A DNA stretch of 64,000 nt from Macrostomum lignano (lineage: Eukaryota), in contig NIVC01000020.1 in NCBI GenBank assembly GCA_002269645.1, positions 744,001 through 808,000 of the forward strand, given 5' to 3'. The translations under genes and the position numbers were made by a program. The notes beneath the pieces were generated by a model that had not been told where the DNA came from, ran no database searches, and worked only from the letters and a program-made list of their open reading frames with translations. This document shows positions 24,863-61,880 of the stretch, piece by piece. Positions within the stretch are counted from its first letter, which is position 1. Every line of letters starts with the position of its first letter.

Positions 24863-25678
24863 CATTGGTCAGCAAACTTTTCACCTTAAGGGCCAGATTG
24901 AGGGCCCCCGTAAGCAAAACGCGCCCAGGAGTCCCAGACTGCAGGCAAGAGAAGGGAGAGAGGATAAGGAATAGAGCAGAGAATTATATGAGTGTAGGAG
25001 AAAGGAGAGGCGAGGAGAGGAGAAGGAAAGGAAAGACAAGATAAGAGGAGAGAGGAGAGGAGAGAAAAGAGGAGAGGAGAGGAGAGAGGAGAGGAGATGA
25101 GAGAGGTGAGGAGAGGAGAGGAGAGGAGAGAGGAGAGGAGATGAGAGAGGAGAGGAGATGAGAGAGGTGAGGAGAGGAAAGGAGAGAGGTGAGGAGAGGA
25201 AAGGAGAGAGGTGAGGAGAGGAAAGGAGAGGGGAGGAGAGGAGAGGAGGAGGAGAGGAAAGAAAAGAGGAAAGAGGAGAGGAGAGAAGAGAGGAGAGGAG
25301 AGGAGAGGAGAGGAGAGAGGAGAGGAGATGAGAGAGGAGAGGAGATGAGAGAGGTGAGGAGAGTAGAGAGGAGAGGAGATGAGAGAGTTGAGGAGAGGAG
25401 AGAAGAGAGGAGAGAAGAGGAGAGGAGAGGAAAGGAGAGAGGATAGGAGATGAGAAAGGTGAGGAGAGGAAAGGAGAGAGGAGAGGAGATAGGTAAGGAG
25501 ATGAGAGGAGAAGAGAGAGGAGAGGAGAGAACAGGAGAAGAATATGAGAAGAGAGCTGAGAAGAGACAAACATCGAGCGGGCCGGATTGCTATTGTGAAG
25601 ATATAAAGGATCCGAGGGCCGGATAGAGAGGCTTTGCAGGCCACATCTGGCCCTCAGGCTGGAGTTTGCCGACCCCTG
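24863..25678. mobile_element. hAT/Charlie-like MITE nested in the previous element, with internal GA-rich array
   Basis: Ends CATTGGTCAGCAAAC / GTTTGCCGACCCCTG (12/15 inverted match); flanks TCTTAGTG / TTTTAGTA (6/8). Confidence 0.65.
24945..25560. repeat. GA-rich (GAGAG)n array inside the nested MITE
   Basis: Seen directly. Confidence 0.95.
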
Positions 25679-36075: not shown

Positions 36076-38550
36076 GAGCAGTGAGGAAAGGGGTCAAAGC
36101 CAGATACTAGCTGGCAATAGGAAAGTCAAACTGTTAACGGCCTGACTGGGGACTGAGACAACCCAACCCCTTTTCTCTCTTGCTCGCGTCGCAATGCACA
36201 CGCACTTTTGGGTTTTTCAAGCCATGCAAGAAAAGGCCAGAGGTGGTTGTTGCCAGTAGCAAATTCCGGAGAAAAAATTGCTTCTCCCCCAGAAATTCCA
36301 GGGAAAAAATCCTCTATACACCCCCGAAAAATCCTGGCTGCGCCTCTGGTTGCTGCAGTTTAAAAAACGTATAATTTGAATTTTATAACCATTTAGGCAA
36401 AAAATTATTTTGCTACTGAAAAAGGCCGCATTTTTTGAAAAAGACTGAAAAAGATCGCATTTTATCGAGTTTGCATCTACTTATGTGTGGTACCAGCTAT
36501 AAGCAGTTTTTGTTTTCCTTAGAAAGGAGAGCTCCTTCATACCGCCATTAATTAAGGCATCACTTCACAAGTGATGCGCAAGGCTTCAAAGTTTGCGTAA
36601 ATAATAATGACCACGCAAATTTTGGCGCAAATGATAATTTAGGAGCCAAATGTTCATGCAGTGGTCATTTGTTTTACATGAAAAATTCGTTAAGTGGTCA
36701 CTAAGCTTCACATCCCACCCCTAATTCCATGACTCGCTCAGCTTCACAGCTTCCCTCCTGACTTATTCAGCCTTGCAGCGTCCATGGTTGTGGACAGTAG
36801 CCGAGTCCTCTTTGCCATCTTCCATCTCTCATTCGCGCCACCCGAGGCACCACAGAAAAGCAAAAATGACGTCCCAAATCACGTGAACCGAATCACGTGA
36901 ATTTTCTCCACGTGTACCGCGGTGCCCCAGCTTGTTCTTCCCCGTGGCGTGCTGATTTTGCCTGTGCCAGACAGATATTGTCTTTGACTGTGTCTTTGAG
37001 CTGCTCCAGTCCGACACGCCAATTAGAAAGTCGCTACGAGTTCGAGCGGCTCAAAGTCTGTCTGCGGCAGCTGCTCCCCGAAATTCGAATAGTGGGACGC
37101 GAGTAATTAAACAGATGCGCGCAGTCGCTGCCTCGCGTGCCCGCCAGCAGCTGCCGCGAGTGGCCGACAGGCCGGCAGCCCCGCGCTAATTTGATTTCGA
37201 GTGCGCGTCTGCAAAACACGCCGGCTCGACCCTGACACCTGCCCGCCTGCCAGCGAGGGGGGAGGCTTAATGAGGCTCCGCGAATGCGACCGCGTCTGCC
37301 GGCCTCACATATCTGGGCCAATTTACGGACTGAGGCGGAGTCGCTGATATTTGCGCCTGCAACAATTCCTGCTGTCTTCAAAACCGACTTTTACGTGACC
37401 AAATATGACAGCTGCTGGTGCTCATCAAGCCTTCTGCATGTGTCCTGGATAATCTCTACACTTGTCCACCGTCATCTCTGCATGAATGTACATCCACTCT
37501 GCATTCTTAATGTGTCTAACCACGGTTTATAAATGTCTGCATGTGATGCAAGGATATCTCGTGTTCACGATGATGCGTCCACACAATGATTGTTTATGTC
37601 CACGAGATGCTTTCCAATTCTAACCTCTACTATAGCTTCTACACACGCGCCAGCAATGTCGGCTGTGTGCTCATGAAAATGTCCAGGGCCTTTGCAGCAG
37701 GTGTCCGCAATAAGAATTGATTGTCAAACGATTCCCAGTCATCTTTGTCGCATAAACCACGCCTCCGCGCTTCACTGCAGCGGCTGCTGAGCCGGATTTC
37801 TACACAGATGAACCGAAATGCGCGGGCTGTGACGGATCGCGGGATCAACGCGGCTCAGTCATGCCGGGATGGGGGGCGGCGCCTGCGCGGATTAAAACGA
37901 AAGCCAGCCTACGGAACCGAGCTACCGGATGGGGAAGTCGCTGGCCGATGAGCTCCCTGATTTATCTGCCGCAGCTGCCCCCCCCCCCTGTCCGGGACGC
38001 CCAAGGCTTGGCAAAGAGTTTCTTCGGCCGCAGGAATTGCAGGAAGTTCGGGCAAAAGGACCGGAAGCCGCTGCGCTGAAGCATTCATTCAGGCCGGCTG
38101 GGGAGCCCCCAAGATGGAGAGCATCGAAGGGTCCCAGAGGGTCTCTTTGAATCGCTGAGAGAAGAGCGACATCATACAAATTTTAAATTTTTAATAGACA
38201 GCAGGTTGCATCAGAAGCCAGTGAAGCATAATGATTTATAATCAGCTGCTGTGCAATTATTGAGACGCTGGAGACGCTGGGCACGAAGGCGAGCGCCAGC
38301 CTTTTCGCTTCCTCCAATCCGACGCTGCCGCGGCGCCATTGGGCGGGGCTGCTGCAGTAAAAGCTGCCGCCCGCGGCTGCCGAGCCGGCGCGCACTGGCG
38401 GGGAGCGAGGCCTGAATTCTCCCTGAGCTCGAGATTTGAATCACCTTAGCTGAGGACTTCGCATACGGTTAGTCTGACTCGCTCGTTTTCACTTCCATTG
38501 AGTTCAAATAGAATAGAATAGTATTAGTAATAAATCATGTTCACTGCACT

Positions 38551-38750
38551 TCCCTTCATTCACAGCGCCTCCCTTCATTCACAGCGCCTCTCTTCATTCA
38601 CAGCGCCTCCCTTCATTCACAGCGCCTCCCTTCATTCACAGCGCCTCCCTTCATTCACAGCACCTCCCTTCATTCACAGCGCCTCCCTTCATTCACAGCG
38701 CCTCCCTTCATTCACAGCAACTCCCTTCATTCACAGCCCCTCCTTTCATT
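38551..38750. repeat. 19-bp minisatellite (CTTCATTCACAGCGCCTCC)n, short copy, about 10 units
   Basis: Same unit as 44823-47455. Confidence 0.92.
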
Positions 38751-39063
38751 CAAATTTGCACGACTTGCGAGTGTAGCAGATAAATAAAGGAGGAATGAAA
38801 GCTCACAGGCTGCTCTAAAGGACTGGCAGGCACCGCATCGTGTCGGATTGAATGTACACTTGGCTGCACTGTCTATGGCCGGAGTCGCAAGCAGAGGTTT
38901 AACAGAGCATTGGCTATTGCACTCTCTATGGCACTTGGCGAAACTCAATCCTAGCAAGGAATTCCTAATTCCTTCCTGCTTCCGACTTTGTTAACCCCCT
39001 GACTCTCATCTTCTCAATCCTCTCCGCTCTCCGGCAGAGCTGCTCGAATACAAAAGCAGGGCG

Positions 39064-42000
39064 ATGAAGCTGCAGTTGCCACTGCTTCTCCTGCCGCTGC
39101 TTCTGCCGCTGTCGGCCGCCACCGCCGCCGCAACCGCCGCCGCCGCTGCCGATTCGAAGGTCGCGACTGCCGACGCGCTGCAGGCGACGCTGGACGCTCT
39201 GACGGCCGCGGTTGATTTTGTCAGCAACAACATTGACAGCGTCAACTTGGACGGCGCCATCGGCCTGCGGATGGCCGAGGGTACGCTGGGGCTTCTGGAT
39301 GTCACACGAAGCTGTCACTCTGGATGTCACACTAACCTGTCCCTCTGAATGTCACAAACTTGTCACTCTGGATGTCACAAACCTGTCACTCTAGATATCA
39401 CAAACCTGTCACTCTGGATGTCACACTAACCTATCACTCTAAATGTCACATTAACCTATCCCTCCGAATGTCACACACTAACCTGGCACTCTGGATGTCA
39501 CACTAACCTGTCACTCTGAATGTCACACACTAACCTGTCACTCTGGATGTCACACTAACCTGTAACTCTGGATGTCACACTAACCTGTCACTCTGGATGT
39601 CACACAAACCTGTCACTCTGGATGTCACACTAACCTGTCACTCCGGCTGTCGGTGAACACAAAACACCCCTGATTATTATAAAAGATTTTTGAAGTGATC
39701 AGAGAAGAGCCGCTCGAACCCGCAGGCCAAACGAAGGCGCTGCTCGCCCACTACTGGAGCCGCCTGCCTCAGGGCGCGGTCGCCCGCCTCGCTGAGCTGC
39801 ACAGCCGGGCCGGCCGAGCCGCCAACCGGGCCGTCCAGTCGGTGCGCAGGCGGACGCCGGTGTACTACGCCAGTGAGTGACAGCCGCGCCCGTAGCAACA
39901 GAAGCCGCCCCATTCCGACCAGGGCAGCCCTGGGTCTGAGCCGCTGTGAATCTGAGATGCGTACTCGCTTGTTGGCTGCAACAAGTCGGCTTCTCCCATC
40001 GCATCCATTATCTCTAATCCTCTTGTGATTCTTTAATCCCTTCGTTTCGCATGCAGACGCTGGCAACATGATCCGAGAGCACTTCTGGGACACCTTCTAC
40101 CCCGCCCGGCCGCTGCCTCCCGCCGCCGTGCGCGCCGCCGACAAGGACAAGGACTTTGATGAGAAATTCAGCGATGACTGCATCAAAGAGTTTTATGGGC
40201 CCGACGGGTGAGTGACGACTCGCTGCTTCTTGTCCCTTCAGAGGTTTCTGTGTTCCTCTTGGGTCTCGTGAGGGTTTGGCGGGCGTGTGCTTTTATTCCA
40301 TGTTGTAATCGTTCCTGATTTTAACTCCATGCGTGTGCTCATTGTCCAGTGCTCACGCTCTTTGGACGTCTCTCTGCTCTACCGTAACTTAAATTAATGT
40401 ACGAGTACTTGGTTGGTGTTTTTAGCCCTTGGGTTGGGGTTGCTGCGATTGAACCTCGTTTATGCGAGTAATAAATCGTTTCGTTGTTTGTCAGTGCCAC
40501 TCAGCACTTTTGTCTCGCCTCGCATACTCTCTGCTCTTGACTTGCTCCTTTAACAGTTCCCTTCCCTGAGCTGTCTGTGTTCCCTTCCCTGAGCTGTCTG
40601 CGTTTTCTTTTCCCTGAGCTGTCTGTGTTCCCTTCCCTGAGCTGTCTGCGTTTTCTTTTCCCTGAGCTGTCTGTGTTCCCTTTCCTGAGCTGTCTGTGTT
40701 TTCTTTTCCCTGAGCTATCTGTATTCCCTTGCCTGAGCTGTCTGTGTTTTCTTTTCCCTGAGCTGTCTGTGTTTTCTTTTCCCTGAGCTGTCTGTATTCC
40801 CTTCCCTGAGCTGTCTGTATTCCCTTCCCTGAGCTGTCTGTATTCCCTTCCCTGAGCTGTCTGTATTCCCTTCCCTGAGCTGTCTGTATTCCCTTCCCTG
40901 AGCTGTCTGTATTCCCTTCCCTGCGCTGTCTGTATTCCCTTCCCTGAGCTGTCTGTATTCCCTTCCCTGCGCTGTCTGTATTCCCTTCCCTGAGCTGTCT
41001 GTATTCCCTTCCCTGAGCTGTCTGTATTCCCTTCCCTGAGCTGTCGTAAGGGTTTCTTTCCCTCTATCATCTACCATGCCCGCCACCATCAGCTGCCCGC
41101 CACCATCAGCTGCCCGCCACCATCAGCTGCCCGCCACCATCAGCTGCCCGCCACCATCAGCTGCCCGCCACCATCAGCTGCCCGCCACCATCAGCTGCCC
41201 GCCACCATCAGCTGCCCGCCACCATCAGCTGCCCCACTCCACCCCACCGCGCCTCTTCAGGAAGTCGCCAGGCTGCTCGGTCTCAGAGCGCTGCTGGCGA
41301 GGCCTGGTGCTGCCCACAGGACTCACGGGCTACTCGCTGACTCACCAGCTGTTCTACCTCATGAACGGCGTCCAGGTGAGGCGTTATACCTGTTGCTCAA
41401 TCATAGCGAAATTTTGATGAAAGTTCCTTAGCTAACAAAACACTTCATGCCGAGGCAAAGCTGCCCCTCTGTTCGGAGAAGGTTTCTTCTTGCAGCTCGA
41501 GTCCACTGCACCGTCCCGCAGGCCGGCTGCCTGTCCAACCTGACCGCCCAGGCTCGTGCCCACCCTCCCGCCGGCACCGACGGCAGTCTGGCCGGCGTCT
41601 TCGACAACTTCTGCGCAAGGATCTTCGTTGAGGCCAGCAAGCTAGAGACGGCCGGCTTCCCCAAGCCGGACAGGGACCTCTTCATGGAGCAGGGTGAGCG
41701 GGGTCAATGACCTCTTCATGGAGCAGGGTGAGCGGGGTCAATGACCTCTTCATGGAGCAGGGTGAGCGGGGTCAACGACTTCTTCATGGAGCAGGGTGAG
41801 CGGGGACAATGACCTCTTCATGGAGCAGGGTGAGCGGGGACAATGACCTCTTCATGGAGCAGGGTGAGCGGGGACAATGACTTCTTCATGGAGCAGGGTG
41901 AGCGGGGACAATGACCTCTTCATGGAGCAGGGTGAGCGGAGTCAATGACTTCTTCATGGAGCAGGGTGAGGGGGACAATGACCTCTTCATGGAGCAGGGT

Positions 42001-42817
42001 GAGCGGAGTCAATGACTTCTTCATGGAGCAGGGTGAGCGGAGTCAATGACTTCTTCATGGAGCAGGGTGAGCGGGGACAATGACCTCTTCATGGAGCAGG
42101 GTGAGCGGGGACAATGACCTCTTCATGGAGCAGGGTGAGCGGAGTCAATGACTTCTTCATGGAGCAGGGTGAGCGGGGTCAATGACTTCTTCATGGAGCA
42201 GGGTGAGCGGAGTCAATGACTTCTTCATGGAGCAGGGTGAGCGGGGACAATGACCTCTTCATGGAGCAGGGTGAGCGGAGTCAATGACCTCTTCATGGAG
42301 CAGGGTGAGGGGGACAATGACCTCTTCATGGAGCAGGGTGAGCGGAGTCAATGACTTCTTCATGGAGCAGGGTGAGCGGAGTCAATGACTTCTTCATGGA
42401 GCAGGGTGAGCGGGGACAATGACCTCTTCATGGAGCAGGGTGAGCGGGGACAATGACCTCTTCATGGAGCAGGATGAGCAGGGACAATGATCGTAATTCA
42501 TCCATCTGAAGCTGAACATGCTGCACCCCGCCCCCCCAGTGGGTCTCTGTGGCCTGGCGGGCTACCCGGAATTCGCCCGATGGCGCTGGCTGCCGGTGCT
42601 GCTGAGCTGGCAGCGGGCCAACGGCTGCTTTGGCGAGTTCCCCGGCGAGCTCATCAATCCTTCGAACTTCGATCCCGGTCTCTATGGCAACTACAAGCGC
42701 AGGAGGAAGCGCGCCGAGATGCGGATGCCGGAGGGCTGCCTGTCGCACCGGACCTCGGTGGCCATAGCCGGGCTGACGGCCTACTGCAGGCGGCTCGTGG
42801 AGACGCTCGCCAATTGA
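39064..42817 (+). CDS. C16orf89: UPF0764/C16orf89-like (DUF4735) secreted protein, 359 aa, 6 exons
   Basis: Exons (+): 39064-39280, 39726-39872, 40057-40207, 41261-41375, 41522-41693, 42540-42817; phases 1,1,2,0,1. Hydrophobic signal peptide; NLDGAIGLRMAEGQ, SDDCI, GYSLTHQLFY, RDLFMEQVGLCG, SWQ..GCFGE, GCLSHRTSVA. AATAAA at 42850-42855. Confidence 0.85.
39293..39645. repeat. 25-bp minisatellite (CTGTCACTCTGGATGTCACACTAAC)n, C16orf89 intron 1
   Basis: About 14 units; related array at 49567-49736. Confidence 0.9.
40555..41045. repeat. 23-bp minisatellite (TTCCCTGAGCTGTCTGTATTCCC)n
   Basis: C16orf89 intron 3. Confidence 0.92.
41077..41234. repeat. 17-bp minisatellite (TGCCCGCCACCATCAGC)n
   Basis: About 9 units, next to the acceptor at 41260. 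Confidence 0.92.
41675..42490 (+). repeat. 34-bp exon-end plus donor-site tandem array, about 24 copies
   Basis: Unit GACCTCTTCATGGAGCAGG|GTGAGCGGGG(T/A)CAAT; the first copy is the end of C16orf89 exon 5. Confidence 0.95.
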
Positions 42818-43120
42818 GGAACCCTCCGTGTGCTCGCAGAGAGAGTGAAAATAAATTTGGAATTTCGGCAATGAAAAAATCCCACCCACAGCCATCTCTG
42901 TGACCTGGGGATGCAGCTATTTTTCTGAGCTTCATCAAAAGCAACATTTTCTTTGCTGGCTTGCGGAAGCTTCTTATTTGGGTTCAGTTGAGCCCGGGTT
43001 TGCCCCAGTGATAGTCTCAGCTCTGATAGGACAGGCAGGCAGAAGAAATGAATGAAGAAGAACCCGGCAGCCAATCAGAAGGCGAGGAGGGAGAGGCTTT
43101 AAGGAATGAAAAAATACGTT

Positions 43121-43170
43121 GGAGTCCACGAGGAAGCCTGGCCGTAGCGGGTAGGGAAGTTGCCCAGCAT
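43121..43170 (-). pseudogene. MOB2 exon-2 remnant
   Basis: 46 of 49 positions match 50661-50709 (encodes MLGNFPTRYGQA, then a 1-nt deletion frameshift). The acceptor-side sequence is deleted. Confidence 0.85.
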
Positions 43171-43177
43171 GTGAGCG

Positions 43178-43402
43178 CACCCACCCCACCAATTATTTCC
43201 GCTGGGGATCTTAGTGTAAAGTGGCGCATCCACCCAACCAATTATTTCCGCTGGGGATCCCAGTGTACAGTGGCGCATCCACCCCACCAATTATCTCCGC
43301 TGGGGATCCCAGTGTACAGTGGCGCATCCACCCCACCAATTATCTCCGCTGGGGATCCCAGTGTACAGTGGCGCATCCACCCCACCAATTATCTCCGCTG
43401 GG
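43178..43402. repeat. ~49-bp minisatellite (CCACCAATTATCTCCGCTGGGGATCCCAGTGTACAGTGGCGCATCCACC), 4-5 units
   Basis: Paralogous to 50835-51316. Confidence 0.9.
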
Positions 43403-43849
43403 GATTCAAGTGCTGATTCAAATCGTTGATTTATCAACTGACTTCAACAAAGCATTCGCCTTCAGTCCATTAAAACAATTGAGAAGAATTTACAGCCCAC
43501 TGACTCGAGCATTTGCCCTCACTGCGACACGCACCGACTGACTTCTTTTCAGCTGAAAGCATTAATCGGCAGTCACGGTCTGAGCGATTTTAAAAAGCAT
43601 TGAAAACAATCGGAGAAAGCATTAGCCCGGAGCTCGAAGGTAAAAAACCAGACCTAGCGCTAATTGCAATACCTGCCTGCCAATCGCCTGAGCCACTCAG
43701 CTCGATTGGAAATGATTGCAAGCAGAATTTTCCCCCACTCAACCGGTAAGAGAGAGGCGCCTTGTCTAGACTGCTCAGACTAAAATCTGCCGAGTTAACC
43801 TAAGCCGTAAATGAAGCATAGTCTCGAGATGGTCTCGCTTTTGATTCAT

Positions 43850-44606
43850 GAGTCCGAGCTGCCCCCTCACTGAGTCCCCAGACTGAGCTGCCCCCCCTCA
43901 ATGAGTCCTCAGACTGAGAGCTGCCCCCCCTCAATGAGTCCTCAGACTGAGCTGCCCCTCCCCTCAATGAGTCCTCAGACTGAGCTGCCCCTCCCCTCAA
44001 TGAGTCCTCAGACTGAGCTGCCCCTTAATGAGTCCTCAGACTGAGAGCTGCCCCTTAATGAGTCCTCAGACTGAGAGCTGCCCCCTCAATGAGTCCCCCC
44101 CCCTCATGAGTCCTCAGACTGAGAGCTGCCCCCTCAATGAGTCCTCAGACTGAGCTGCCCCCTCACTGAGTCCTCAGACTGAGCTGCCCCCTCATGAGTC
44201 CTCAGACTGAGCTGCCCCCTCATGAGTCCTCAGACTGAGCTGCCCCCTGATGAGTCCTCAGACTGAGCTGCCCCCTCATGAGTCCTCAGACTGAGCTGCC
44301 CCCTCATGAGTCCTCAGACTGAGCTGCCCCCTGATGAGTCCTCAGACTAAGCTGCCCCCTCATGAGTCCTCAGACTGAGCTGCCCCCTCACTGAGTCCTC
44401 AGACTGAGCTGCCCCCTGATGAGTCCTCAGACTGAGCTGCCCCCTCACTGAGTCCTCAGACTGAGCTGCCCCCTCATGAGTCCTCAGACTGAGCTGCCCC
44501 CTGATGAGTCCTCAGACTGAGCTGCCCCCTCATGAGTCCTCAGACTGAGCTGCCCCCTCATGAGTCCTCAGACTGAGCTGCCCCCCTCAATGAGTCCTCA
44601 GACTGA
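43850..44606. repeat. ~28-bp minisatellite (GAGTCCTCAGACTGAGCTGCCCCCTCAT)n
   Basis: About 27 units; degenerate 2-3-unit relative at 51407-51505. Confidence 0.93.
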
Positions 44607-44822
44607 TTCACTTTGCTTCACACCCCTTCACGCGCTGGTGGGGAGCGGGTCCTGAATTCCCCCTTAATCTCGAGACCGCCTTGGCTGGGGACTTCGCATA
44701 AGATTAGTCTGACTCGCTCGTTTTCTCCAATGGGTTCAAATAGCTTAGTTAAGGACTCATTGAGCGCGGCAGATAGGTGTGAGTATTAGTTATAAGATAA
44801 ATAATCATGTTTACTTGCGCTC

Positions 44823-47455
44823 TCCCTTCATTCACAGCACCTCCCTTCATTCACAGCGCCTCCCTTCATTCACAGCACCTCTCTTCATTCACAGCACCTC
44901 CTTTCATTCACAGCGCTTCTCTTCATTCACAGCACCTCCCTTCATTCACAGCGCTTCTCTTCATTCACAGCACCTCTCTTCATTCACAGCACCTCTTCAT
45001 TCACAGCGCTTCTCTTCATTCACAGCACCTCTCTTCATTCACAGCACCTCTTCATTCACAGCGCTTCTCTTCATTCACAGTACCTCCCTTCATTCACAGC
45101 GCCTCCCTTCATTCACAGCGCCTCCCTTCATTCACAGCACCTGATCCCTTCCTTCATTCACAGCGCCTCCCTTTATTCACAGCACCTCCCTTCATTCACA
45201 GCGCCTCCCTTCATTCACAGCACCTGATCCCTTCCTTCATTCACAGCGCCTCTCTTCATTCACAGCACCTCCCTTCATTCACAGCGCCTCCCTTCATTCA
45301 CAGCACCTCTCTTCATTCACAGCGCCTCCCCTTCATTCACAGCGGCTCCCTTCATTCACAGCGCCTCCCTTCATTCACAGCGCCTCCCTTCATTCACAGC
45401 GGCTCCCTTCATTCACAGCGGCTCCCTTCATTCACAGCGCCTCCCTTCATTCACAGCGCCTCCCTTCATTCACAGCGCCTCCCTTTCATTCACAGCGCCT
45501 CCCTTCATTCACAGCGCCTCCCTTCATTCACAGCGCCTCCCTTTCATTCACAGCGCCTCCCTTCATTCACAGCGCCTCCCTTCATTCACAGCGCCTCCCT
45601 TTCATTCACAGCGCCTCCCTTCATTCACAGCGCCTCCCTTCATTCACAGCGCCTCCCTTCATTCACAGCGCCTCCCTTCATTCACAGCGCCTCCCTTCAT
45701 TCACAGCGCCTCCCTTCATTCACAGCGCCTCCCTTTCATTCACAGCGCCTCCCTTCATTCACAGCGCCTCCCTTTCATTCACAGCGCCTCCCTTCATTCA
45801 CAGCGCCTCCCTTCATTCACAGCGCCTCCCCTTCATTCACAGCGCCTCCCTTCATTCACAGCGCCTCCCCTTCATTCACAGCGCCTCCCTTCATTCACAG
45901 CGCCTCCCTTCATTCACAGCGCCTCCCTTCATTCACAGCGCCTCCCTTCATTCACAGCGCCTCCCTTCATTCACAGCGCCTCCCTTCATTCACAGCGCCT
46001 CCCTTCATTCACAGCGCCTCCCTTCATTCACAGCGCCTCCCCTTCATTCACAGCGCCTCCCCTTCATTCACAGCGCCTCCCTTCATTCACAGCGCCTCCC
46101 CTTCATTCACAGCGCCTCCCCTTCATTCACAGCGCCTCCCTTCATTCACAGCGCCTCCCTTCATTCACAGCGCCTCCCTTTCATTTACAGCGCCTCCCTT
46201 CATTCACAGCGCCTCCCTTCATTCACAGCGCCTCCCTTCATTCACAGCGCCTCCCTTCATTCACAGCGCCTCCCCTTCATTCACAGCGCCTCCCTTCATT
46301 CACAGCGCCTCCCCTTCATTCACAGCGCCTCCCCTTCATTCACAGCGCCTCCCTTCATTCACAGCGCCTCCCTTCATTCACAGCGCCTCCCTTCATTCAC
46401 AGCGCCTCCCTTCATTCACAGCGCCTCCCTTCATTCACAGCGCCTCCCCTTCATTCACAGCGCCTCCCCTTCATTCACAGCGCCTCCCTTCATTCACAGC
46501 GCCTCCCCTTCATTCACAGCGCCTCCCCTTCATTCACAGCGCCTCCCTTCATTCACAGCGCCTCCCTTCATTCACAGCGCCTCCCTTTCATTCACAGCGC
46601 CTCCCTTCATTCACAGCGCCTCCCTTCATTCACAGCGCCTCCCTTCATTCACAGCGCCTCCCTTCATTCACAGCGCCTCCCTTCATTCACAGCACCTGAT
46701 CCCTTCCTTCATTCACAGCGCCTCCCTTTCATTCACAGCGCCTCCCTTCATTCACAGCGCCTCCCTTTATTCACAGCACCTCCCTTCATTCACAGCGCCT
46801 CCCTTCATTCACAGCACCTGATCCCTTCCTTCATTCACAGCGCCTCTCTTCATTCACAGCACCTCCCTTCATTCACAGCGCCTCCCTTCATTCACAGCAC
46901 CTCTCTTCATTCACAGCGCCTCCCTTCATTCACAGCGGCTCCCTTCATTCACAGCGCCTCCCTTCATTCACAGCGCCTCCCTTCATTCACAGCGCCTCCC
47001 CTTCATTCACAGCGCCTCCCTTCATTCACAGCACCTCTCTTCATTCACAGCGCCTCCCTTCATTCACAGCGGCTCCCTTCATTCACAGCGCCTCCCTTCA
47101 TTCACAGCGCCTCCCTTCATTCACAGCGCCTCCCCTTCATTCACAGCGCCTCCCTTCATTCACAGCACCTCTCTTCATTCACAGCGCCTCCCCTTCATTC
47201 ACAGCGCCTCCCTTCATTCACAGCGCCTCCCTTTCATTCACAGCGCCTCCCTTTCATTCACAGCGCCTCCCTTTCATTCACAGCGCCTCCCTTTCATTCA
47301 CAGCGCCTCCCTTTCATTCACAGCGCCTCCCCTTCATTCACAGCGCCTCCCTTCATTCACAGCGCCTCCCTTCATTCACAGCGCCTCCCTTCATTCACAG
47401 CGCCTCCCTTCATTCACAGCGCCTCCCTTCATTCACAGCGCCTCCCTTTCATTTA
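44823..47455. repeat. 19-bp minisatellite (CTTCATTCACAGCGCCTCC)n, expanded copy, about 135 units
   Basis: Seen directly. Confidence 0.97.
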
Positions 47456-48359
47456 CACACATCTCCGTCAATTCAATAGCTAATAATGATGCAATTTGTG
47501 CTTGTCAAGCTCTCTGTCAGGACAGCAGCTGGCATGCAGATGCTTCACCTACATGCTGTGCACGGATTGCACAGCAGGTGCGCCAGTTTTGATTTACAAA
47601 AAAATCTGCTCTGGCGTAGCGCGAACAGGCGGCCCTCGCATTGCTTCTTGGCTGCATGGCTTAGTTAAATGTTGTAGCATTTGCAAGTATTGATCTTTGT
47701 TTCACGTATTTAAGTTATTTTAACAGTAGCAATATCAAGCCACTACCCGCCCGTTTACGCCCGTAAAAAATACCAATACATTTTTCTTGCTGCACCCGAA
47801 CGGAGCAATCCAGGAACACGAAATTCGAATTGGATTTTACAGTAAGCGCGAACGCATTCAGTGCAAACCCTTGTGCGCCAACCAGCACTGCGCCTCAGTG
47901 CGTCCTTGCCAAGCTTTCAGATTTCACCAGCAGGTTTACCGCATGTGTCTGCATCAGCTCCGACTTCAGTGGCCACAGGTAATTGCCCGGGTAGAGCTCC
48001 TGAACCTTTGGAGACCATGTTGCGACTGTGTCCTGCAGTCTAATGTCCAATGGGCATTGTACAATGTCCTCTACCCAATGTCATAAATTTTTCTGGCAAG
48101 TCCTGATTATTGGCAAACCTCAACTGCTGAACATTCTCAGCTAGTCTTTCAAGCATTCAGTCATCATCCTGACGCTGTCGGCATCTTCAGCATGAGGCAC
48201 TCGCTACATCTACCCGTAATCAACCTGCTGGATACTCTGTAATTCTCGCAGTTCAGTTAATAACTGTGGCATTGAGCTTAGAATTTCAGATTCATGAGAC
48301 TGCGCGATTGGGTCTCTGTGGATAGTATTCTCTCTGCATCTCTAGAGAGATAGATAGTA

Positions 48360-48812
48360 TCTCCTTATCTCCCTGCATCTCCCGGCTCCCTGCATCTCCC
48401 GTCTGTCTGCATCTCTTTATCTCCCTGCATCTCTCATCTCTGAGCATCTCCCGGCTCCCTGCATCTCTTTATCTCCCTGCACCTCCCGTCTCTCTTTATC
48501 TCTGCGTCTCCCTGCATCTCCCGTCCCACTTCATCTCTCGGCCGTTCCCTGCATCTCCCATCCCTCTTCATCTCTCGGCCGTTCCCTGCATCTCCCGTCC
48601 CACTTCATCTCTCGGCCGTTCCCTGCATCTCCCGTCCCACTTCATCTCTCGGCCGTTCCCTGCATCTCTTTAACTCCCTGCATCTCCCGTCTCTCTTTAT
48701 CTCCCGGCTCCCTGCATCTCCCGTCCCTCTTCATCTCTCGGTCGTTCCCTGCATCTCCCATCCCTCTTCATCTCTCGGCCGTTCCCTGCATCTCTGCGTC
48801 TTCCTTCATCTC
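48360..48812. repeat. Degenerate pyrimidine-rich TCCCTGCATCTC repeat
   Basis: Seen directly. Confidence 0.8.
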
Positions 48813-49566
48813 CCGTCTATCAATATACGCTCGTATTTGCACACCAGCCTAACAAACGAGGCCGGCAGAGCCGCCCCGCAGTGAGAGTGGCCGCAGGGAT
48901 TCCAGCAGTCCCAATCAATCTTCTCTGCATCGGAAGCAGCTGGGCCGGGCCGGGGTGGCGCAGAGGAAGCGGCGGGCAGCGGACCGCCCGCCACAATCAG
49001 CCCAGGTGCCCGACCGCCTCACCCGGCCTCACAAGATGTAGAAAATGTTGATCCGAGAGTCGGGATGCATGGGATGCTGGGCCACCCCCCTCCCCACCGA
49101 TACCCCGCTGATCAATGAGCCGCAGCTCTCGCACCGAGAGCAGCATTGCAGTTTATTGCGGAACGCAGACGCGAAGCCCCACAGCGGAACTTCAGCAACA
49201 AAAGCAGCAGCTGCTTTCGCTGCGCTGAATGCGGACAGCGGGCTCTGAAGCCTTTGTGAGACATTGCTGAACTAGAAATAGAAATTCATTCGTTTCATGC
49301 TCTCTCAGAATGTCTTTGAATTCTGCTAAGCTCTGCGTTATTTTGCTTAAGTCCCGCTCTGCTTCAACTCCTGTGAGCACCAAAATGCAGTGGAACCAAA
49401 TTATTCTAGGATCTTGAGTAGTGCGAATTTCCAAGTGAATCTGGCCAATGCGTTTTGCAGCAAAAGCAGACCTGCACTGAAATTTGCACGACTTGCGAGT
49501 GTAGCAGACGAATGAAGGAATGAAAGCTCACAGGATTGGCAGGCACATCGTGTCGGAGGGAATAGC

Positions 49567-49736
49567 CTGTCACTCTGAATGTCACACTAACCTGTCACTC
49601 TTACTGATACACTAGCCTGTCACTCTGAATGTCACACTAACCTGTCACTCTTACTGATACACTAGCCTGTCACTCTGAATGTCACACTAACCTGTCACTC
49701 TTACTGATACACTAGCCTGTCACTCTGAATGTCACA
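49567..49736. repeat. 25-bp minisatellite with alternating variants, relative of the C16orf89 intron-1 array
   Basis: CTGTCACTCTGAATGTCACACTAAC alternating with CTGTCACTCTTACTGATACACTAGC. Confidence 0.88.
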
Positions 49737-50418
49737 CAAGAGAGACCAGGCAGCCAATCAGGAGGCGAGGAGGGAGGGGCTACAAGGAACGAAGAGAGAC
49801 CAGGCAACCAATCAGGGGGCGACTAAAGACAGACTCTGCATTGTTCGGCCAGGTTCCAGTCCAAAAGACACTGAAATAACAAACACACGCAGGACAAGAA
49901 AAGCACGATTAAATACAGGCTAATCCAGTTAAATAAAGCATCATAATGCGCCTATTTGGATAGCAAGATATATATTGTGCATTGATACAGAGGGACTCTG
50001 CAACTGTCGCTAGAACATCAGCGGCAAGTCAGTCAGATCAGGAATAGGTGCAATAATAGTTAACAAATTGCTCTAAGGTGCGAGGCCAATGAAAAACAAA
50101 TGAGGCGAAGGCCCGGGCCTTTGTGTACAAACTCAGTTAGCGCCGCGAATGCATCCAGTTTTTAGGGATCATAAATCATCAGCTCGAGAATCTGGGTTAC
50201 GCAGATAAATAGTTAGACATCGGAGCGGGTGGATCACAGCTGTAGAATTCGGATTAACAGCGGGTCGGAGGGGAATCAGACCCTGGGACAGCGAGGCGTG
50301 GCAGCCCCAGAAATGAAAAGGACCAGGGCCCAAAGCTGAAAGACCAAGATGGAGCAGCCTTGCCAAGTCTGCAAAGGTCATGGGCTTCAGAGGAGGCCGG
50401 CTGGCCGATCCCGGCAGC

Positions 50419-52083
50419 TCAGGCGGTGGAGCAGCCGGCGACATCCACCGGTCGCATGAGGGCCGCCTGCAGATCCGCTAGCACTTCAACGTCCTTGTCG
50501 TCCACAATGCGGAATTTCAGGTTGAACGCAAGCAGGTGCCGCGCCACTGTGTTCAGGTGGGGCGTCAGGTCCATGCGGAGCACGGAGTCAAAGTGGCAGG
50601 CGTACACGTGAGCCAGGATGTGCAGCAGGTGCCGCAACACGCAGGCGGACACGGCGTGGAAGTCCATGAGGAAGGCCTGGCCGTAGCGGGTTGGGAAGTT
50701 GCCCAGCATCTCCTGGCACTGCGTCAGCAGGCTGTCAATGTGGTTGCGGGCCGAGGACCGGGCCTGCAGGGGTTCGGCGTGCGAACAAATGAGCTGTGCT
50801 CAGACTGATCTCTTGTGAAACTGCGGAAATTTGCGCACCCACCCCATCAATTATCTCCGCTGTGGGTCCCAGTGTATAGTGGCGCACCCACTCCACCAAT
50901 TATCTCCGCTGTGGGTCCCAGTGTATAGTGGCGCACCCACCCCACCAATTATCTCCGCTGTGGGTCCCAGTGTATAGTGGCGCACCCACCCCCACCAATT
51001 ATCTCCGCTGTGGGTTCCAGTGTACAGTGGCGCACCCACCCCACCAATTATCTCCGCTGTGGGTCCCAGTGTATAGTGGCGCACCCACCCCACCAATTAT
51101 CTCCGCTGTGGGTCCCAGTGTACAGTGGCGCACCCACCCCACCAATTATTTCTGCTGGGGTCCCAGTGTACAGTGGCGCACCCACCCCACCAATTATCTC
51201 CGCTGTGGGTCCCAGTGTACAGTGGCGCACTCACCCCATCAATTATCTCCGCTGTGGGTCCCAGTTTACAGTGGCGCACCCACCCCACCAATTATCTCCG
51301 CTGTGGGTCCCAGTGTTGATTTGAATCGTTGATTGATCAATTGATTTCAAAAAAAAACATTCGCCTCCAGTCCATTAAAAAATCGAGTAAAATATACAGT
51401 CTATTGAGTCCTCAGACTGAGCTGCCCCCCTCAGAGTCCTCATTGAGTTCATTTGACTGCTCATTGACTGCTGCCCCTTTCAATGAGTTCTCAGACTGAG
51501 CTGCCATAGTGGAGTTGCTGATGTCTTTTTGCTGATCTAAAATCACGCATCAAACCGCCTATGCAAATACGCAGGCAAATAAGTAAAAAACCCATAGTGA
51601 AGACTCACACTATTCCAAAAGTTTTCACCAGCCTCACCTGAGCCATAATGTATCAAATTTAAGTGCAATTTCAATCCCGAAACCCAGAACGCCTGAGAAC
51701 TACAGTAACACTGATTGCATACAAATTCTCACAAGCCATCAGAAAATGCACACCTTCTTAGTCTTTTCTTCGGGAGCGCAGAAGTTCACCCCGCCCGGCC
51801 CGGTGAACTTCTCGCAATTGCAAAAGTCGTACACGGCCTCGAACACCGTGCTGACGTTCTCATACAGGGCGCACACGTGGGTGGCCACCCATTCATTTTG
51901 CTGCAGCAGCAGCGGCTGCTCAAGCAGCTGGTCCAGATCGGTGCCCAGCACAATCTGCTTTGCCGCGTGCTCCGGCTGGGTGTACAGACGGCACTCCTCG
52001 CTGCTGTTGTTGCCGGCAGACGACGGGCTGCGGTCGGCGGCTGAGCCGGGCCGGCCGCGGGCCTTGCCGATTAACCAGTCCAT
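50419..52083 (-). CDS. MOB2: MOB kinase activator 2-like, 224 aa, 2 exons
   Basis: Exons 51754-52083 and 50419-50763 (phase 0). MDWLIGK, NEWVATH, FC, FPTRYG, HLLHILAHVYACHF, HLNT match MOB2 as recalled. Confidence 0.88.
50835..51316. repeat. ~49-bp minisatellite in the MOB2 intron, about 10 units
   Basis: CCACCAATTATCTCCGCTGTGGGTCCCAGTGTATAGTGGCGCACCCACC. Confidence 0.93.
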
Positions 52084-53469
52084 GCGGCCGCGGCTGTCTG
52101 CGGGAAGGCGAAAAATAATTAGGCGCTCAATGCAGACTACTGATAATAGCAAGTCAGTAGCACAGAGAATATCGCTAGTAAATTCTGCTTTCGCACAGTA
52201 AAAGAAAAGCAATACAATTTTTCCTAAACCCAGTGTTCGGTATGATTGTTAATATTTGATTGGAGTCAAGGTCTTGTTTAGTCCCCACACAATCAGTAGT
52301 GTATATAAATCGAATTGGTTTTGGGTTGAAACATTAAAGACAAGGATCGATATATGATTATTGGGATGCTATAGATTCTTCAATTGGGATTAGGATCAAA
52401 TATATGTTGTAAGTCTATAATATGAGCTCCTGAGTACATATAATGACAGCTATACCTCTTCACTGAGCATAAAAGCATGTATGCTAGAATATTTTCCCCT
52501 TACAACTGTTATCATTTATTTGTATTTTATAAAAAAGAATACATGTGCTTTTGGTGCCCAAATATAGTGTCATATATTTTCAATAAGATTTTTACTATAG
52601 ATAGGAGGCCTGTTGTCACAACTGGCAAAATGAATTTGTGCCCATTCTGCTGACTCCTCTGAGTAGGCATATCACAGATATATATACAGTTATATGCACA
52701 GGCACATGCTTACAAGAGTGTACAGTAGCCCTAACTTTATTTATTGTTAGGCATGTACACTTCACTATACCTTTGAGATTAGACTTTAAGGATGTTGATT
52801 ACACAAGTAGGTCAAAGCTGAGATTTAAATTTAGTCCCAAATTTTAATGTTACTGCACTTGGAATTGAGCCTAGGTTGCTGGCTCATAAGACTACTTTGT
52901 TAGACCAATAAGGTTATAGTTTTAACTCAAGAAAAGAAAAACATCAAAGTCTTATATAGTAGATCATAGTCTAATAGACATTTAAATCTAGTATATATAC
53001 TTAGCAACATTGAAAAGTCACCATCATAGAAGATTCTGCCTGTGGTTACAACTTTTGCAAGTGCAAGTAAAGTCTCTCAATCTTCTTGAGTGACACAACT
53101 TAGCTATACTGCAACAGACTTGAGTTGAGGAATGAAGTGGAGGAGCAGTGTGCGAGAGTTAGACAGATTCAAGCTATCCTAATCAGTGTTTTTGTATCTT
53201 TTATTTCAGAATAGTTCAAGATAAATTGCTCACTGGTGCATAGAATGGCAAATTTTCAATGTTGTTGAGTATAGATATAGCATATATATTCTTAGAACCT
53301 ATGAATTGAAATTGGTGCTTTGTTGCTAAGTATATATTTTTTAATATATATATATTTAAAAATTTCTTTTTCCATTAATGCACTAATATGATTGAAGCTA
53401 CAAATGTGATCTTAAAGTCAAAATTTAAAGTCATAGAAAGTGATAAAGCTCATTCAATGATAATTCAAG

Positions 53470-53611
53470 CAGTAGCACAACTAAGAACTTGTTGGAGGGT
53501 AGTGGCTCTGTTTTTTGAAAAAATTTGCTTGGTCCCCCTTTTGTTTTTTTAGGTCTCTGTTTAAATAGGAGGGGTAACTGTCTCCCTGTCTTCCTCTTAG
53601 TTGTGCTACTG
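53470..53611. mobile_element. Short hAT-like MITE, 142 bp
   Basis: Perfect 16-bp TIR CAGTAGCACAACTAAG; flanks AATTCAAG / AATTTAAG (7/8). Confidence 0.7.
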
Positions 53612-54821
53612 AATTTAAGACAATAGGACTATTGAAGATGCCAAATATATAGAAAACATGGTGTCTGACTTCAAAATAAACCATTTAATATAGATCCATG
53701 GCATGTTTCTGGTATATTATATTTGAAGTAGATATACATTTGATAAACATTTTATAGGTTCTAGCTAAGTTAAATATAAAAATTTAATAATTTAAAGCAA
53801 CCTCCATTGAATTTCTTATTTGTTTCTTTTTTCTTACTTATAAGACTATGTGATCTAATTAAACTCAAAATTATCAAATTTTAATAAAAATTATCCTTTC
53901 TTTGGCTTAACATTTTTATAAATTATATTTGCAAAATGTTATAAATATTCTGTTATTACAATCAATAGCTACCAAAATGTGATAAGACTAAAAATCATAT
54001 TTAAATGATTCAAATCATCTATAGTCTTGTAGAGACCCTCTTTGGTGAAAATTCCCATGTCTATGGGCTTTTGAATATCTATGCTATAGAGCTATTTTTA
54101 CCAACATGTAGCCATGTGCTTAGTAAGCATAGCAAATTGTGTGCTACCTAATTCCAGAAGATGTAATGCATGCCAGAATTTTCTAGCATGCATTTGAAAA
54201 TGTCAGCGTACATGGCATGCAATAGAAAGAAAGTGTAGGCCTAGTAGTCAGGGTGCATAATTGCCTTGCAATCTACATTATAGCATGCCAGTGTGAGGCA
54301 TATGATGGATAGACATTAAAGTTATTTGTAGCAAAAAGTAGAATATATTTATGATTAGAGGAGAAATTAGAAAAGCAGTTTTTACTATAGGTGGAAATTT
54401 AGAAAAATGACATGTATTTAATCAAGAATCTATAGGCCTAAACAGTTTGTTAGTAGCAGCCAAAAATGTTTCCATGTGGCTGGCATGTCCACAAGACTTA
54501 AGACTATGGAGTATCATATTATATTTTTTAGCAAGAGAGCTTTCTTTGAGCTATCTTTTGTTTATCATTTCGGAAAATGTTTTCTTTAAATTCATAAACT
54601 AAATGGCTTAAGTACAATGGAAAGTTCATTATTTAATAAAATAATTTTATATAAGAAGATACAGACAAACCATTTTTAGTATATAGGATTAGCAATCTTT
54701 GCCCCCTAATGTGGGACATCTGGATAGAATCTTTGTTCTTTACAAGAATAAATAGACAGCAAAATAAAGCCTTCATAAAAAAAGCAGACATTCCCTCTAA
54801 AAAGAAAATATTCCAATATAG

Positions 54822-60164: not shown

Positions 60165-60786
60165 CACTCAGCAACAGTCAAAATGACTCAAAACCGCCAC
60201 CCTACCGAGAGAGGCAACTTCTCTCTCATCTCAACTGCAAGTGACGTAACTTGTGCCACGGCGTGGCTAAAGCTGGGTGTGAGTGAATGCAGGAGAGGGC
60301 AATCAGGGGATGCCCCATCTGCTTCTTTCACCCCACATTAGACAGAGCAGGGTGGCTGGCACAGTCAGAGTTCGCCTGACAATCCACAGCAGACGTCAAT
60401 TTGCCCTGGCTGTTGAGCCGCGGAGATCATGGCGCTGGCTGCCTATGGCTGCGTGCTGAACACTACCAGTCTCTTGGGACTTCGTTAACAGCGCTCAAAT
60501 TGTTGAACGTGATTGGCCAAATCAGCGAGCAACTGCGCTGATGGATGCACCAGCTTCTAGCATGCCAACAGCGCGCCATCGTTCAGCGTCTGTCATATGC
60601 CTGACCATTGTCACGTGTACTGTTGCACCCCCAACCCCAACTCCAGCCCCTTTTGTACTCTCACCCTGGAATTCACTCACACCCAGCTTTAGCCACGCCG
60701 TGGTGCAAGTTACGTCACTTGCAGTTGAGGTGAGAGAGAAGTCACCTCTCTCTCGGTAAGGTGGCAGTTTTGACTGTTGCTGAGTG
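60165..60786. mobile_element. Tc1/mariner-type MITE, 622 bp, about 130-bp TIRs, TA TSD
   Basis: CACTCAGCAACAGTCAAAA...GCTAAAGCTGGGTGTGAGTGAAT is inverted at 60670-60786; TA flanks both ends. Confidence 0.8.
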
Positions 60787-61039: not shown

Positions 61040-61880
61040 TGGCAACACTGCTCTCTTCTCTCTCCTCTAATCTCTACTCCCTTATTTATCTCTTCTCCCT
61101 CATCTTTCATCTATTATCTCTCCTGTTTCCTCTCTCCTCTTTCCTCTCCTCTCTTATCTCCCCTCTCTTCTCCTTTCTCATATCTCATCTCTAGTCTCTT
61201 ATCTCTAGTCTTTTTTCTACCCTCTCTCATCTCTTTTCTCTCTTCTCTCATTTCTCATATAACCTATATGCTCTCACATCTCCTCTCCTTTTTTATCTCC
61301 CATCTTTCTTCCCTCCTTTCTACCATCTCCTGTCTTCTCTCCTGTCTTCTCTCTTCTCCTTTCTCCTCTCATCTTCCCTCTCTTCTCTAATCTCTAATCT
61401 CTTCTCTCTCCTATTTTCTCACTCCTCTCTTTTTTCATTGCCTCTCATCTTTCCTCTTGCATTCTTATCTTTACCCTCGTCTTTCTCCTCACTACTTTCT
61501 TTATTTAACTCTCTCATGTCTGATATTTTATCTCTCTTCTTTCCTTTCTCCTCTCACTTCTATCTTCTCTCATTTCTAACTCCCTTATTTATTTCTTCTT
61601 CCCTTATTTACAATCTTTTCTTTTCTATTTCCTCTATATGCTCTTATCCTTCCTCTCTTCTCTTTTCTCTAATCTCTCCTGTCTGTCTCCTCTCTATAAT
61701 CTCATATCTCCCCTCTTATCTCCTTTTTCCTTTTCTCTTCTTTCTCCCTCTTCATTCCTGCCTAACTTATCTCTTCTCTTCTATCTAATATCTCTAATCT
61801 GTCTTCTTTCATATCTGCTCTCTTTTCTATCATCTCTTCTTTCTTTTCTTTTCAATCTTCTCTCTATTCTCTTATCTGAC
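61040..61880. repeat. CT-rich low-complexity tract
   Basis: Seen directly. Confidence 0.9.

What the first reader, a model, noticed from the sequence alone, without database searches (positions are those of the whole stretch)
38395..51505. Tandem segmental duplication with reciprocal gene loss (C16orf89 kept in copy 1, MOB2 kept in copy 2)
Seen: homologous landmarks occur in the same order in 38.4-44.6 kb and 44.6-51.5 kb. These are: GACTTCGCATA..AGTCTGACTCGCTCGTTTT (38455/44692); the 19-mer array; AAATTTGCACGACTTGCGAGTGTAGCAGA..GTGTCGGA (38752/49480); the 25-mer array (39293/49567); CAGCCAATCAG.AGGCGAGGAGGGAG (43069/49751); MOB2 exon 2 (43121 remnant/50419-50763 intact); the 49-mer array; GATT..AATCGTTGATT..CAGTCCATTAAAA (43416/51318); and the 28-mer array (43850/51407). 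Copy 1 has a full C16orf89 but only a frameshifted 50-bp MOB2 remnant. Copy 2 has an intact MOB2 but shows no recognisable C16orf89 exon. Inference: duplication followed by complementary deletions restored single-copy dosage.
Basis: partly seen in the sequence, partly recalled or inferred. Interest (0 to 1): 0.72.

Follow-up and report, generated by a model that had tools for sequence, protein, structure and literature searches.

The report
Old tandem duplication, inner copy decayed
A roughly 6-7 kb stretch of a flatworm (Macrostomum lignano-type) chromosome was duplicated head-to-tail long ago and the redundant inner parts have since been whittled away, which is a real but ordinary kind of genome change.

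Summary
Blocks 38383-44606 and 44622-51505 share eight landmarks in the same order and on the same strand: five unique islands (BLAST E 1e-11 to 1e-17, the fifth within a 1e-105 match) and four minisatellite arrays. A reversed-sequence control gives 0 matches against 230 real ones. None of the landmarks occurs in 114 kb of other DNA from this genome.

The window is Macrostomum lignano-type DNA. Two independent contigs of assembly GCA_002269645.1, about 97% identical to the window in unique sequence, carry the same two blocks with the same junctions. Copy 1 and copy 2 are only about 78-80% identical, so the duplication is about 7 times older than the split between these loci. It is not an assembly or haplotype artefact.

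The DUF4735 (C16orf89-like) gene is intact in copy 1 and absent from copy 2. The Mob-family gene was never duplicated whole: the unit ends inside its single intron, so only its last exon was copied, and the copy-1 remnant is a decayed orphan exon. "Restoring single-copy dosage" has no support, because at least three paralogous loci carry both genes. The "MOB2" subtype label is unverified. This is an ordinary duplication followed by loss of function, so interest is low.

The parts
38383..44606 (+). Copy 1 of the duplicated unit. It holds the intact DUF4735 gene and a decayed piece of the Mob last exon.
   Evidence: Self-BLAST. The boundary comes from the 4-way alignment and the junction print-out.
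44607..44621 (.). The single novel junction of the tandem duplication: the end of the copy-1 28-mer array, a short filler of unknown origin, then the start of copy-2 island A.
   Evidence: J7. The same junction is present in L001.
44622..51505 (+). Copy 2 of the unit. It has no DUF4735 exons, and it holds the functional last exon of the Mob gene and part of its intron.
39064..42817 (+). DUF4735 / C16orf89-like gene with 6 coding exons (39064-39280, 39726-39872, 40057-40207, 41261-41375, 41522-41693, 42540-42817), encoding 359 aa. An AATAAA signal lies at 42850.
   Evidence: Gene model. Pfam PF15882 at 3.5e-57. The protein is 99% identical to the annotated M. lignano protein BOX15_Mlig015391g1.
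50419..52083 (-). Mob1/phocein-family gene: exon 1 at 52083-51754, a 990-nt intron, exon 2 at 50763-50419, encoding 224 aa. Only exon 2 and 741 nt of the intron lie inside the duplicated unit.
   Evidence: Gene model. Pfam PF03637 at 1.3e-34. The protein is 99% identical to BOX15_Mlig003624g1.
43120..43170 (-). Frameshifted 51-bp remnant of Mob exon 2 in copy 1. It matches 50657-50709.
   Evidence: BLAST 92.5% identity, E 1e-15. tblastn finds 15 aa at 87% identity. The 1-base deletion shows. L001 and L004 have the same remnant.
38391..38511 (+). Island A in copy 1. Its partner in copy 2 is 44631-44743.
38540..38752 (+). 19-mer minisatellite in copy 1 (11 units). Its partner at 44817-47457 has 136 units.
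38752..38852 (+). Island B in copy 1. Its partner in copy 2 is 49480-49560.
39294..39651 (+). 25-mer minisatellite in intron 1 of DUF4735. Its partner at 49563-49737 is the only trace of the DUF4735 gene body in copy 2.
43055..43110 (+). CCAAT-containing island downstream of DUF4735. Its partner at 49738-49793 is itself partly repeated up to 49822.
43171..43495 (+). 49-mer minisatellite plus an 83-bp unique flank in copy 1. The partner at 50827-51399 lies in the Mob intron.
43856..44606 (+). 28-mer minisatellite in copy 1 (26 units). Its partner at 51405-51505 is a degenerate remnant.
47458..49479 (.). Segment X, present only in copy 2. It contains its own 17-52-bp array at 48360-48818. It has no terminal inverted repeats and no Pfam domain, and it is conserved in L001 and L004.
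43496..43855 (.). 360-bp segment present only in copy 1, between the 49-mer flank and the 28-mer array.

Best explanation
This is an old, fixed tandem duplication of a unit about 8-10 kb long. The ancestral unit ran from about 680 bp upstream of the DUF4735 (C16orf89-like) start codon, through the whole DUF4735 gene, across the tail-to-tail intergenic region, and into the convergent Mob-family gene. It ended inside that gene's only intron.

The duplication placed a second unit head-to-tail with a single new junction at 44607-44621. The Mob gene went on using the exon-2 copy next to its exon 1, which lies in copy 2. The other exon-2 copy, stranded about 7 kb away in copy 1, had no function from the start. 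Of the two DUF4735 copies, the one in copy 2 was lost.

The redundant material lies between the intact DUF4735 gene and the intact Mob exon, at roughly 43055-49793. It then decayed through at least six insertion or deletion events, plus expansion and contraction of the minisatellites.

What is shown: the two collinear copies, the single junction, which pieces are present or absent, the position of the boundary inside the Mob intron, and the presence of the whole structure in three diverged loci. What is inferred: that copy 2 once held a complete DUF4735 gene, that the differences arose as deletions after the duplication, and that the losses were neutral. The structure has no evident function of its own.
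For: Eight collinear same-strand landmarks are present; the unique islands score E 1e-11 to 1e-17 and the reversed-sequence control gives 0 HSPs. The landmarks are absent from the rest of the window and from 114 kb of other M. lignano DNA.

One landmark is a piece of a coding exon and another is an array from a DUF4735 intron, so the unit was gene-bearing DNA and not a mobile repeat.

Loci L001 and L004 come from two different contigs of GCA_002269645.1. They show the same blocks, the same absent segments and the same junction sequences.

In the 4-way alignments, pooled over islands A, B, the Mob remnant and the 49-mer flank, window copy 1 against L001 copy 1 is 96.8% identical and copy 2 against copy 2 is 96.5%. 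Copy 1 against copy 2 is 79.5% in the window and 77.4% in L001. The Jukes-Cantor distances are about 0.24 and 0.034. The duplication therefore predates the split of these loci about 7-fold.

The window differs from L001 and L004 by 2-3.5% mismatches plus indels. That is close to the published divergence between the three subgenomic copies of M. lignano, 1.9-2.4% SNPs with many indels (PMC10733133).

The Mob gene model places exon 1 outside the unit.
Against: No pre-duplication (single-copy) state was found, so each insertion or deletion cannot be polarised and the ancestral unit is a reconstruction.

The shared unique islands are short (50-120 bp). A 51-bp exon island bounded by two gaps (863 bp and 117 bp) takes two separate deletions to explain, and a one-step patchwork event would explain it as well.

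Gene conversion between the copies, if any occurred, would bias the age estimate.

There is no expression evidence that the inner region is silent.
Confidence: 0.8

Rival explanations
1. One-step complex rearrangement. A replication template-switching event of the FoSTeS/MMBIR type copied a series of short segments (A, 19-mer, B, 25-mer, CCAAT, exon piece, 49-mer, 28-mer) in order. Under this reading a complete second DUF4735 gene never existed and few later deletions are needed.
For: The shared unique islands are short and strictly collinear. Six of seven junctions abut minisatellites. Copy-2 island A contains a possible inverted fragment of the 28-mer unit at 44742-44772, about 120 bp from the duplication junction and shared by L001 (E only 0.026). 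Junction J5 has a 4-nt filler.
Against: Segments unique to each copy (X at 2 kb; the 360 bp at 43496-43855) still need extra events. Abutting an array is expected for about 77% of random deletions, because arrays make up 52% of the region and a breakpoint inside an array looks like one at its edge (my arithmetic gives P(>=5 of 6) of about 0.5). The inverted fragment is statistically marginal.
Confidence: 0.13
2. Assembly artefact: two haplotypes or homeologs of one locus were joined end to end.
For: M. lignano assemblies are known to be redundant and error-prone for paralogous copies (PMC10733133; PMC5730564).
Against: The same structure appears in the window and on two other contigs. The two blocks differ by about 20% in unique sequence, while the known paralog divergence is 2-3%. 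Each block lacks an essential part of one gene, which is not expected of haplotypes.
Confidence: 0.02
3. The landmarks are dispersed repeats, or parts of a composite mobile element that carries satellites, and they happen to lie in the same order.
For: 26% of the window is minisatellite. Another array family does occur at three dispersed sites: 2423-3236, 24943-25634 and 61048-61710.
Against: The landmarks and array units have no hits outside the two blocks, either in the window or in 114 kb of other loci. Eight of eight are in the same order and on the same strand. One landmark is a host-gene exon piece. X has no terminal inverted repeats or transposase domains. Only about 165 kb of the genome could be sampled.
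Confidence: 0.03

Closest known systems
Tandem segmental duplication followed by loss of function of the redundant copy (the classical fate of duplicates; established knowledge)
   Same: There are two adjacent same-orientation copies, one novel junction, one intact and one degraded version of each functional element, and higher divergence between the copies than between orthologous copies.
   Different: Decay here is almost entirely by large deletions, not point mutations. Only 50-120-bp islands and minisatellites survive as evidence.
Reciprocal gene loss / divergent resolution of duplicates (described after whole-genome duplications, for example in yeasts and fishes; cited from my own knowledge)
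   Same: Superficially, each copy keeps a different gene.
   Different: That concept needs both genes to have been duplicated whole, and usually concerns different lineages or populations. Here the Mob gene was duplicated only in part, so which copy survived was fixed by the position of exon 1. Nothing suggests selection on dosage.
Partial gene duplication that leaves an orphan terminal exon
   Same: The breakpoint lies inside an intron, the duplicated 3' exon is separated from the rest of the gene, and that exon is now frameshifted and truncated.
   Different: The orphan exon was not recruited into a chimeric gene or an alternative 3' end, as far as the sequence shows. This was not tested with transcripts.
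Replication-based complex rearrangements (FoSTeS/MMBIR)
   Same: Short collinear templated segments, a filler at a junction, and a possible inverted templated fragment near the junction.
   Different: No junction shows clear diagnostic microhomology. The pattern is equally explained by serial deletions in an array-rich region.

Membership tests
Tandem segmental duplication | Two adjacent copies in the same orientation, with several independent markers in the same order | tested here: met
   Eight landmarks, all plus/plus and collinear. The reversed control gives 0 HSPs.
Tandem segmental duplication | A single novel junction where the end of the unit meets the start of the unit | tested here: met
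   The end of the 28-mer array at 44606 is joined to island A at about 44622, with a short filler between them. The junction is identical in L001.
Tandem segmental duplication | Real in the genome, not produced by the assembly | tested here: met
   The structure is present on two further contigs, NIVC01001057.1 and NIVC01001504.1. Divergence between the copies is about 20%, against about 3% between loci.
Tandem segmental duplication | A single-copy state in an outgroup, to give polarity | not testable with these tools
   The paralog loci L002 and L005 and the cestode loci L006 and L007 are not syntenic. No sister-species genome was reachable.
Reciprocal (complementary) gene loss | Both genes were completely duplicated | tested here: not met
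   Mob exon 1 (52083-51754) lies outside the unit, which ends at 51505. There is no exon-1 homology in copy 1.
Reciprocal (complementary) gene loss | Each copy retains a different functional gene | tested here: met
   DUF4735 is intact only in copy 1, and Mob exon 2 is intact only in copy 2.
DUF4735 / C16orf89 (UPF0764) protein family | A match to Pfam PF15882 above the gathering score over the full domain | tested here: met
   194.6 bits against a cut-off of 31.2, covering profile positions 1-281 of 283.
Mob1/phocein protein family | A match to Pfam PF03637 above the gathering score | tested here: met
   120.1 bits against a cut-off of 27, covering profile positions 6-169 of 170.
MOB2 subfamily specifically | Closer to MOB2 than to MOB1, MOB3 or MOB4 (phocein) | tested here: inconclusive
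   The best solved-structure matches are MOB1A/B (1e-19), ahead of yeast Mob2 (9e-15). No animal MOB2 reference was available and no phylogeny was made.
Mobile element / dispersed repeat | Copies elsewhere, terminal repeats, and transposition proteins | tested here: not met
   No hits in 114 kb of background DNA or in the rest of the window. X has no terminal inverted repeats. The X ORFs have no Pfam domain.

The most novel reading that the evidence does not exclude
The two-block structure was made in a single replication template-switching event that hopped between minisatellites. More generally, the minisatellites that fill a quarter of this window would then be the main drivers of the very large indel divergence reported between M. 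lignano subgenomes. In that case the locus would be a fossil of array-driven complex rearrangement and not a case of duplication followed by decay.
Probability: 0.12. Interest if true: 0.4.

Novelty: new member of a known kind. Interest (0 to 1): 0.2.

Why it matters
The main value is as a clean annotation result. It explains a confusing 13-kb repeat-rich stretch between two real genes, and it shows that the stretch is not an assembly error in a genome known to be hard to assemble. It also gives a dated marker: the duplication predates the divergence of the paralogous genome copies of M. lignano. It shows, too, that "each copy kept a different gene" can follow simply from where a duplication breakpoint falls inside a gene, without any selection on dosage. 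It does not open a new biological question.

Tried and rejected
(1) I looked for a pre-duplication locus. The DUF4735 paralog locus L002 (47% aa identity) has no Mob neighbour. The Mob paralog locus L005 (70% aa identity) has no DUF4735 within 10 kb. The cestode DUF4735 loci L006 and L007 have no Mob gene within 10 kb. None of them is informative.

I did not attempt it by any other route.

(3) P0004 (75% identity, named 'transposase' in UniRef) looked like a possible relocated second copy. Its sequence shows it is a frameshifted model of the same gene from an older assembly.

(4) I tested segment X for mobile-element features. It has no terminal inverted repeats and no protein domain.

(5) Scans for Rfam families and tRNAs across the window found nothing.

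(6) I considered that minisatellites are deletion hotspots, because 6 of 7 junctions abut an array. I set this aside as unproven. Arrays cover 52% of the region, so about three quarters of random deletions would look the same.

(7) I searched for hidden homology in the copy-specific segments with word size 7. Only chance-level hits appeared.
Full report
**What the sequence is.** The region holds two real genes. On the + strand, six exons between 39064 and 42817 encode a 359-aa protein. It matches Pfam DUF4735, the C16orf89/UPF0764 family, at 3.5e-57. It is 99% identical to Macrostomum lignano protein BOX15_Mlig015391g1. On the - strand, two exons (52083-51754 and 50763-50419, separated by a 990-nt intron) encode a 224-aa Mob1/phocein-family protein. 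That protein is 99% identical to BOX15_Mlig003624g1. The two genes are convergent, tail to tail. The window is therefore flatworm DNA of the M. lignano type. Minisatellites with periods of 10 bases or more make up 26% of the window and 52% of 38383-51505. The published genome-wide figure for simple and tandem repeats is 15% (PMC5730564).

**Checking the observation.** All are on the same strand and in the same order.
- Island A: 38391-38511 / 44631-44743.
- 19-mer array: 11 units in copy 1, 136 in copy 2.
- Island B: 38752-38809 / 49480-49534.
- 25-mer array: 39294-39651 / 49563-49739.
- CCAAT island: 43055-43110 / 49738-49793.
- Piece of Mob exon 2: 43120-43170 / 50657-50709.
- 49-mer array with an 83-bp flank: 43171-43495 / 50827-51399.
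- 28-mer array: 43856-44606 / 51405-51505.

The unique islands score E 1e-11 to 1e-17. With copy 2 reversed as a null, no HSP appears at E<=10, against 230 real ones. None of the islands or array units occurs elsewhere in the window or in 114 kb of other DNA from this genome. The Mob remnant has a 1-base deletion, so it is frameshifted. Copy 2 holds no DUF4735 exon trace by tblastn at E<=10. The segments private to one copy have no hidden homology in the other.

**Is it real?** Two other contigs of assembly GCA_002269645.1 carry the same gene pair: NIVC01001057.1 (L001/L003) and NIVC01001504.1 (L004). L001 and L004 are 99.7-100% identical to each other. They differ from the window by 2-3.5% mismatches plus indels. 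That is close to the 1.9-2.4% SNP divergence, with abundant indels, published for the three paralogous genome copies of M. lignano (PMC10733133). Both loci show the same two blocks, the same missing pieces and the same junction sequences.

In four-way alignments, pooled over islands A, B, the Mob remnant and the 49-mer flank, each window copy pairs with its counterpart in L001 at 96.8% and 96.5% identity. Copy 1 and copy 2 are only 79.5% identical in the window and 77.4% in L001. With the Jukes-Cantor correction these are about 0.034 and 0.24. The duplication and essentially all of its decay are therefore about seven times older than the split between these loci. This rules out a mis-joined haplotype.

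**What happened.** The unit runs from about 38383 to 44606 in copy 1 and from about 44622 to 51505 in copy 2. The only new junction is the end of the 28-mer array joined to island A through a short filler. The right end of the unit lies inside the Mob intron, 249 bp from exon 1. No copy of exon 1 exists in copy 1 in either locus tested, the window or L004.

The duplication therefore copied the whole DUF4735 gene but only the last exon of the Mob gene. The exon-2 copy next to exon 1 stayed in use, and the other was an orphan from the first day. The 25-mer array lies in intron 1 of DUF4735 in copy 1 and sits between islands B and CCAAT in copy 2. It is the evidence that DUF4735 gene-body sequence was once part of copy 2.

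The redundant inner material lies at about 43055-49793. Compared with the intact versions it has gaps of 441 bp (5' UTR plus exon 1), 3.4 kb (exons 2-6), 863 bp and 117 bp (on either side of the Mob remnant), 360 bp, and 2 kb (segment X).

The arrays have changed length freely. The 19-mer array has 11 and 136 units in the window, but 33 and 34 in L001. The 28-mer array has 26 units in the window and about 4 in L001.

**Mechanism and rivals.** The best-supported reading is tandem duplication followed by neutral loss of the redundant parts (confidence about 0.8).

A one-step template-switching rearrangement would give a similar patchwork and cannot be excluded (about 0.13). Three points favour it: the islands are short, one junction has a 4-nt filler, and a marginal (E 0.026) inverted fragment of the 28-mer unit lies at 44742-44772 near the junction and is shared by L001.

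Six of seven junctions abut a minisatellite. I do not count this as evidence that the arrays cause breakage. Arrays fill half of the region, and a breakpoint inside an array cannot be told from one at its edge. About 77% of random deletions would therefore look like this.

Assembly artefact and dispersed repeats are each at 0.03 or below, for the reasons given above.

**Comparison with what is known.** This is the classical fate of a tandem duplicate. It is not a member of the 'reciprocal gene loss' category, because one of its defining features failed when tested: both genes must have been duplicated whole. The idea that deletions 'restored single-copy dosage' has no support, since at least three paralogous loci each carry both genes. 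The 'MOB2' subtype label is unverified. The solved structures that match best are MOB1A/B.

**What could not be done.** No single-copy outgroup was found. The paralog loci L002 and L005 and the cestode loci L006 and L007 are not syntenic. Only about 165 kb of the genome could be sampled for repeat copy number. No transcript data were available.

**Verdict.** This is an ordinary, old tandem duplication with a decayed inner copy. I score interest at 0.2 and rate it a new member of a known kind.

Noticed in passing
window 41668-42490 (also L001 12983-13739): A 34-bp minisatellite of 24 units starts inside exon 5 of the DUF4735 gene, and each unit repeats the exon end plus the splice donor (…ATGGAGCAG|GTGAGCGG). 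Only the first donor (or one 9 nt later) gives an open reading frame. All later donors would put a stop codon in the message. The array is conserved, with 22 units, in the paralogous locus. How the spliceosome picks the first of 24 near-identical donors is unexplained.
   Followed up: partly
window 1-64000: 36 minisatellite arrays with periods of 10 bases or more cover 26% of the window. Many lie inside introns, for example the 23-mer and 17-mer arrays at 40557-41234 in DUF4735 intron 3. Their unit numbers differ widely between the window and L001.
   Followed up: partly
window 2423-3236, 24943-25634, 61048-61710: One array-like repeat family occurs at three dispersed sites in the window, unlike the landmarks of the finding.
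   Followed up: no
window 60188-60288 and 60671-60773: A pair of 103-bp inverted repeats, 91% identical, overlaps the start of a short ORF (60522-60680, - strand). The ORF has a weak helix-turn-helix similarity that is below the Pfam cut-off (E 0.02). This may be a remnant of a DNA transposon.
   Followed up: partly
window 52500-54000: G+C falls from 0.50-0.62 in the gene pair to 0.26-0.32 just upstream of the Mob gene.
   Followed up: no
window 44742-44772 (also in L001 copy 2): A 39-bp insertion in copy-2 island A, absent from copy 1, resembles the 28-mer array unit in inverted orientation (E 0.026). It lies about 120 bp from the duplication junction.
   Followed up: partly
window 49738-49822; L001 18394-18528: The CCAAT island is single in copy 1. 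In copy 2 it is becoming a 54-56-bp tandem repeat, with about 1.5 units in the window and 2.5 in L001.
   Followed up: no
L005 10001-10757: The 70%-identical Mob paralog has an intron of only about 70 bp where the window's gene has 990 bp. Most of that 990 bp is the 49-mer and 28-mer arrays.
   Followed up: no
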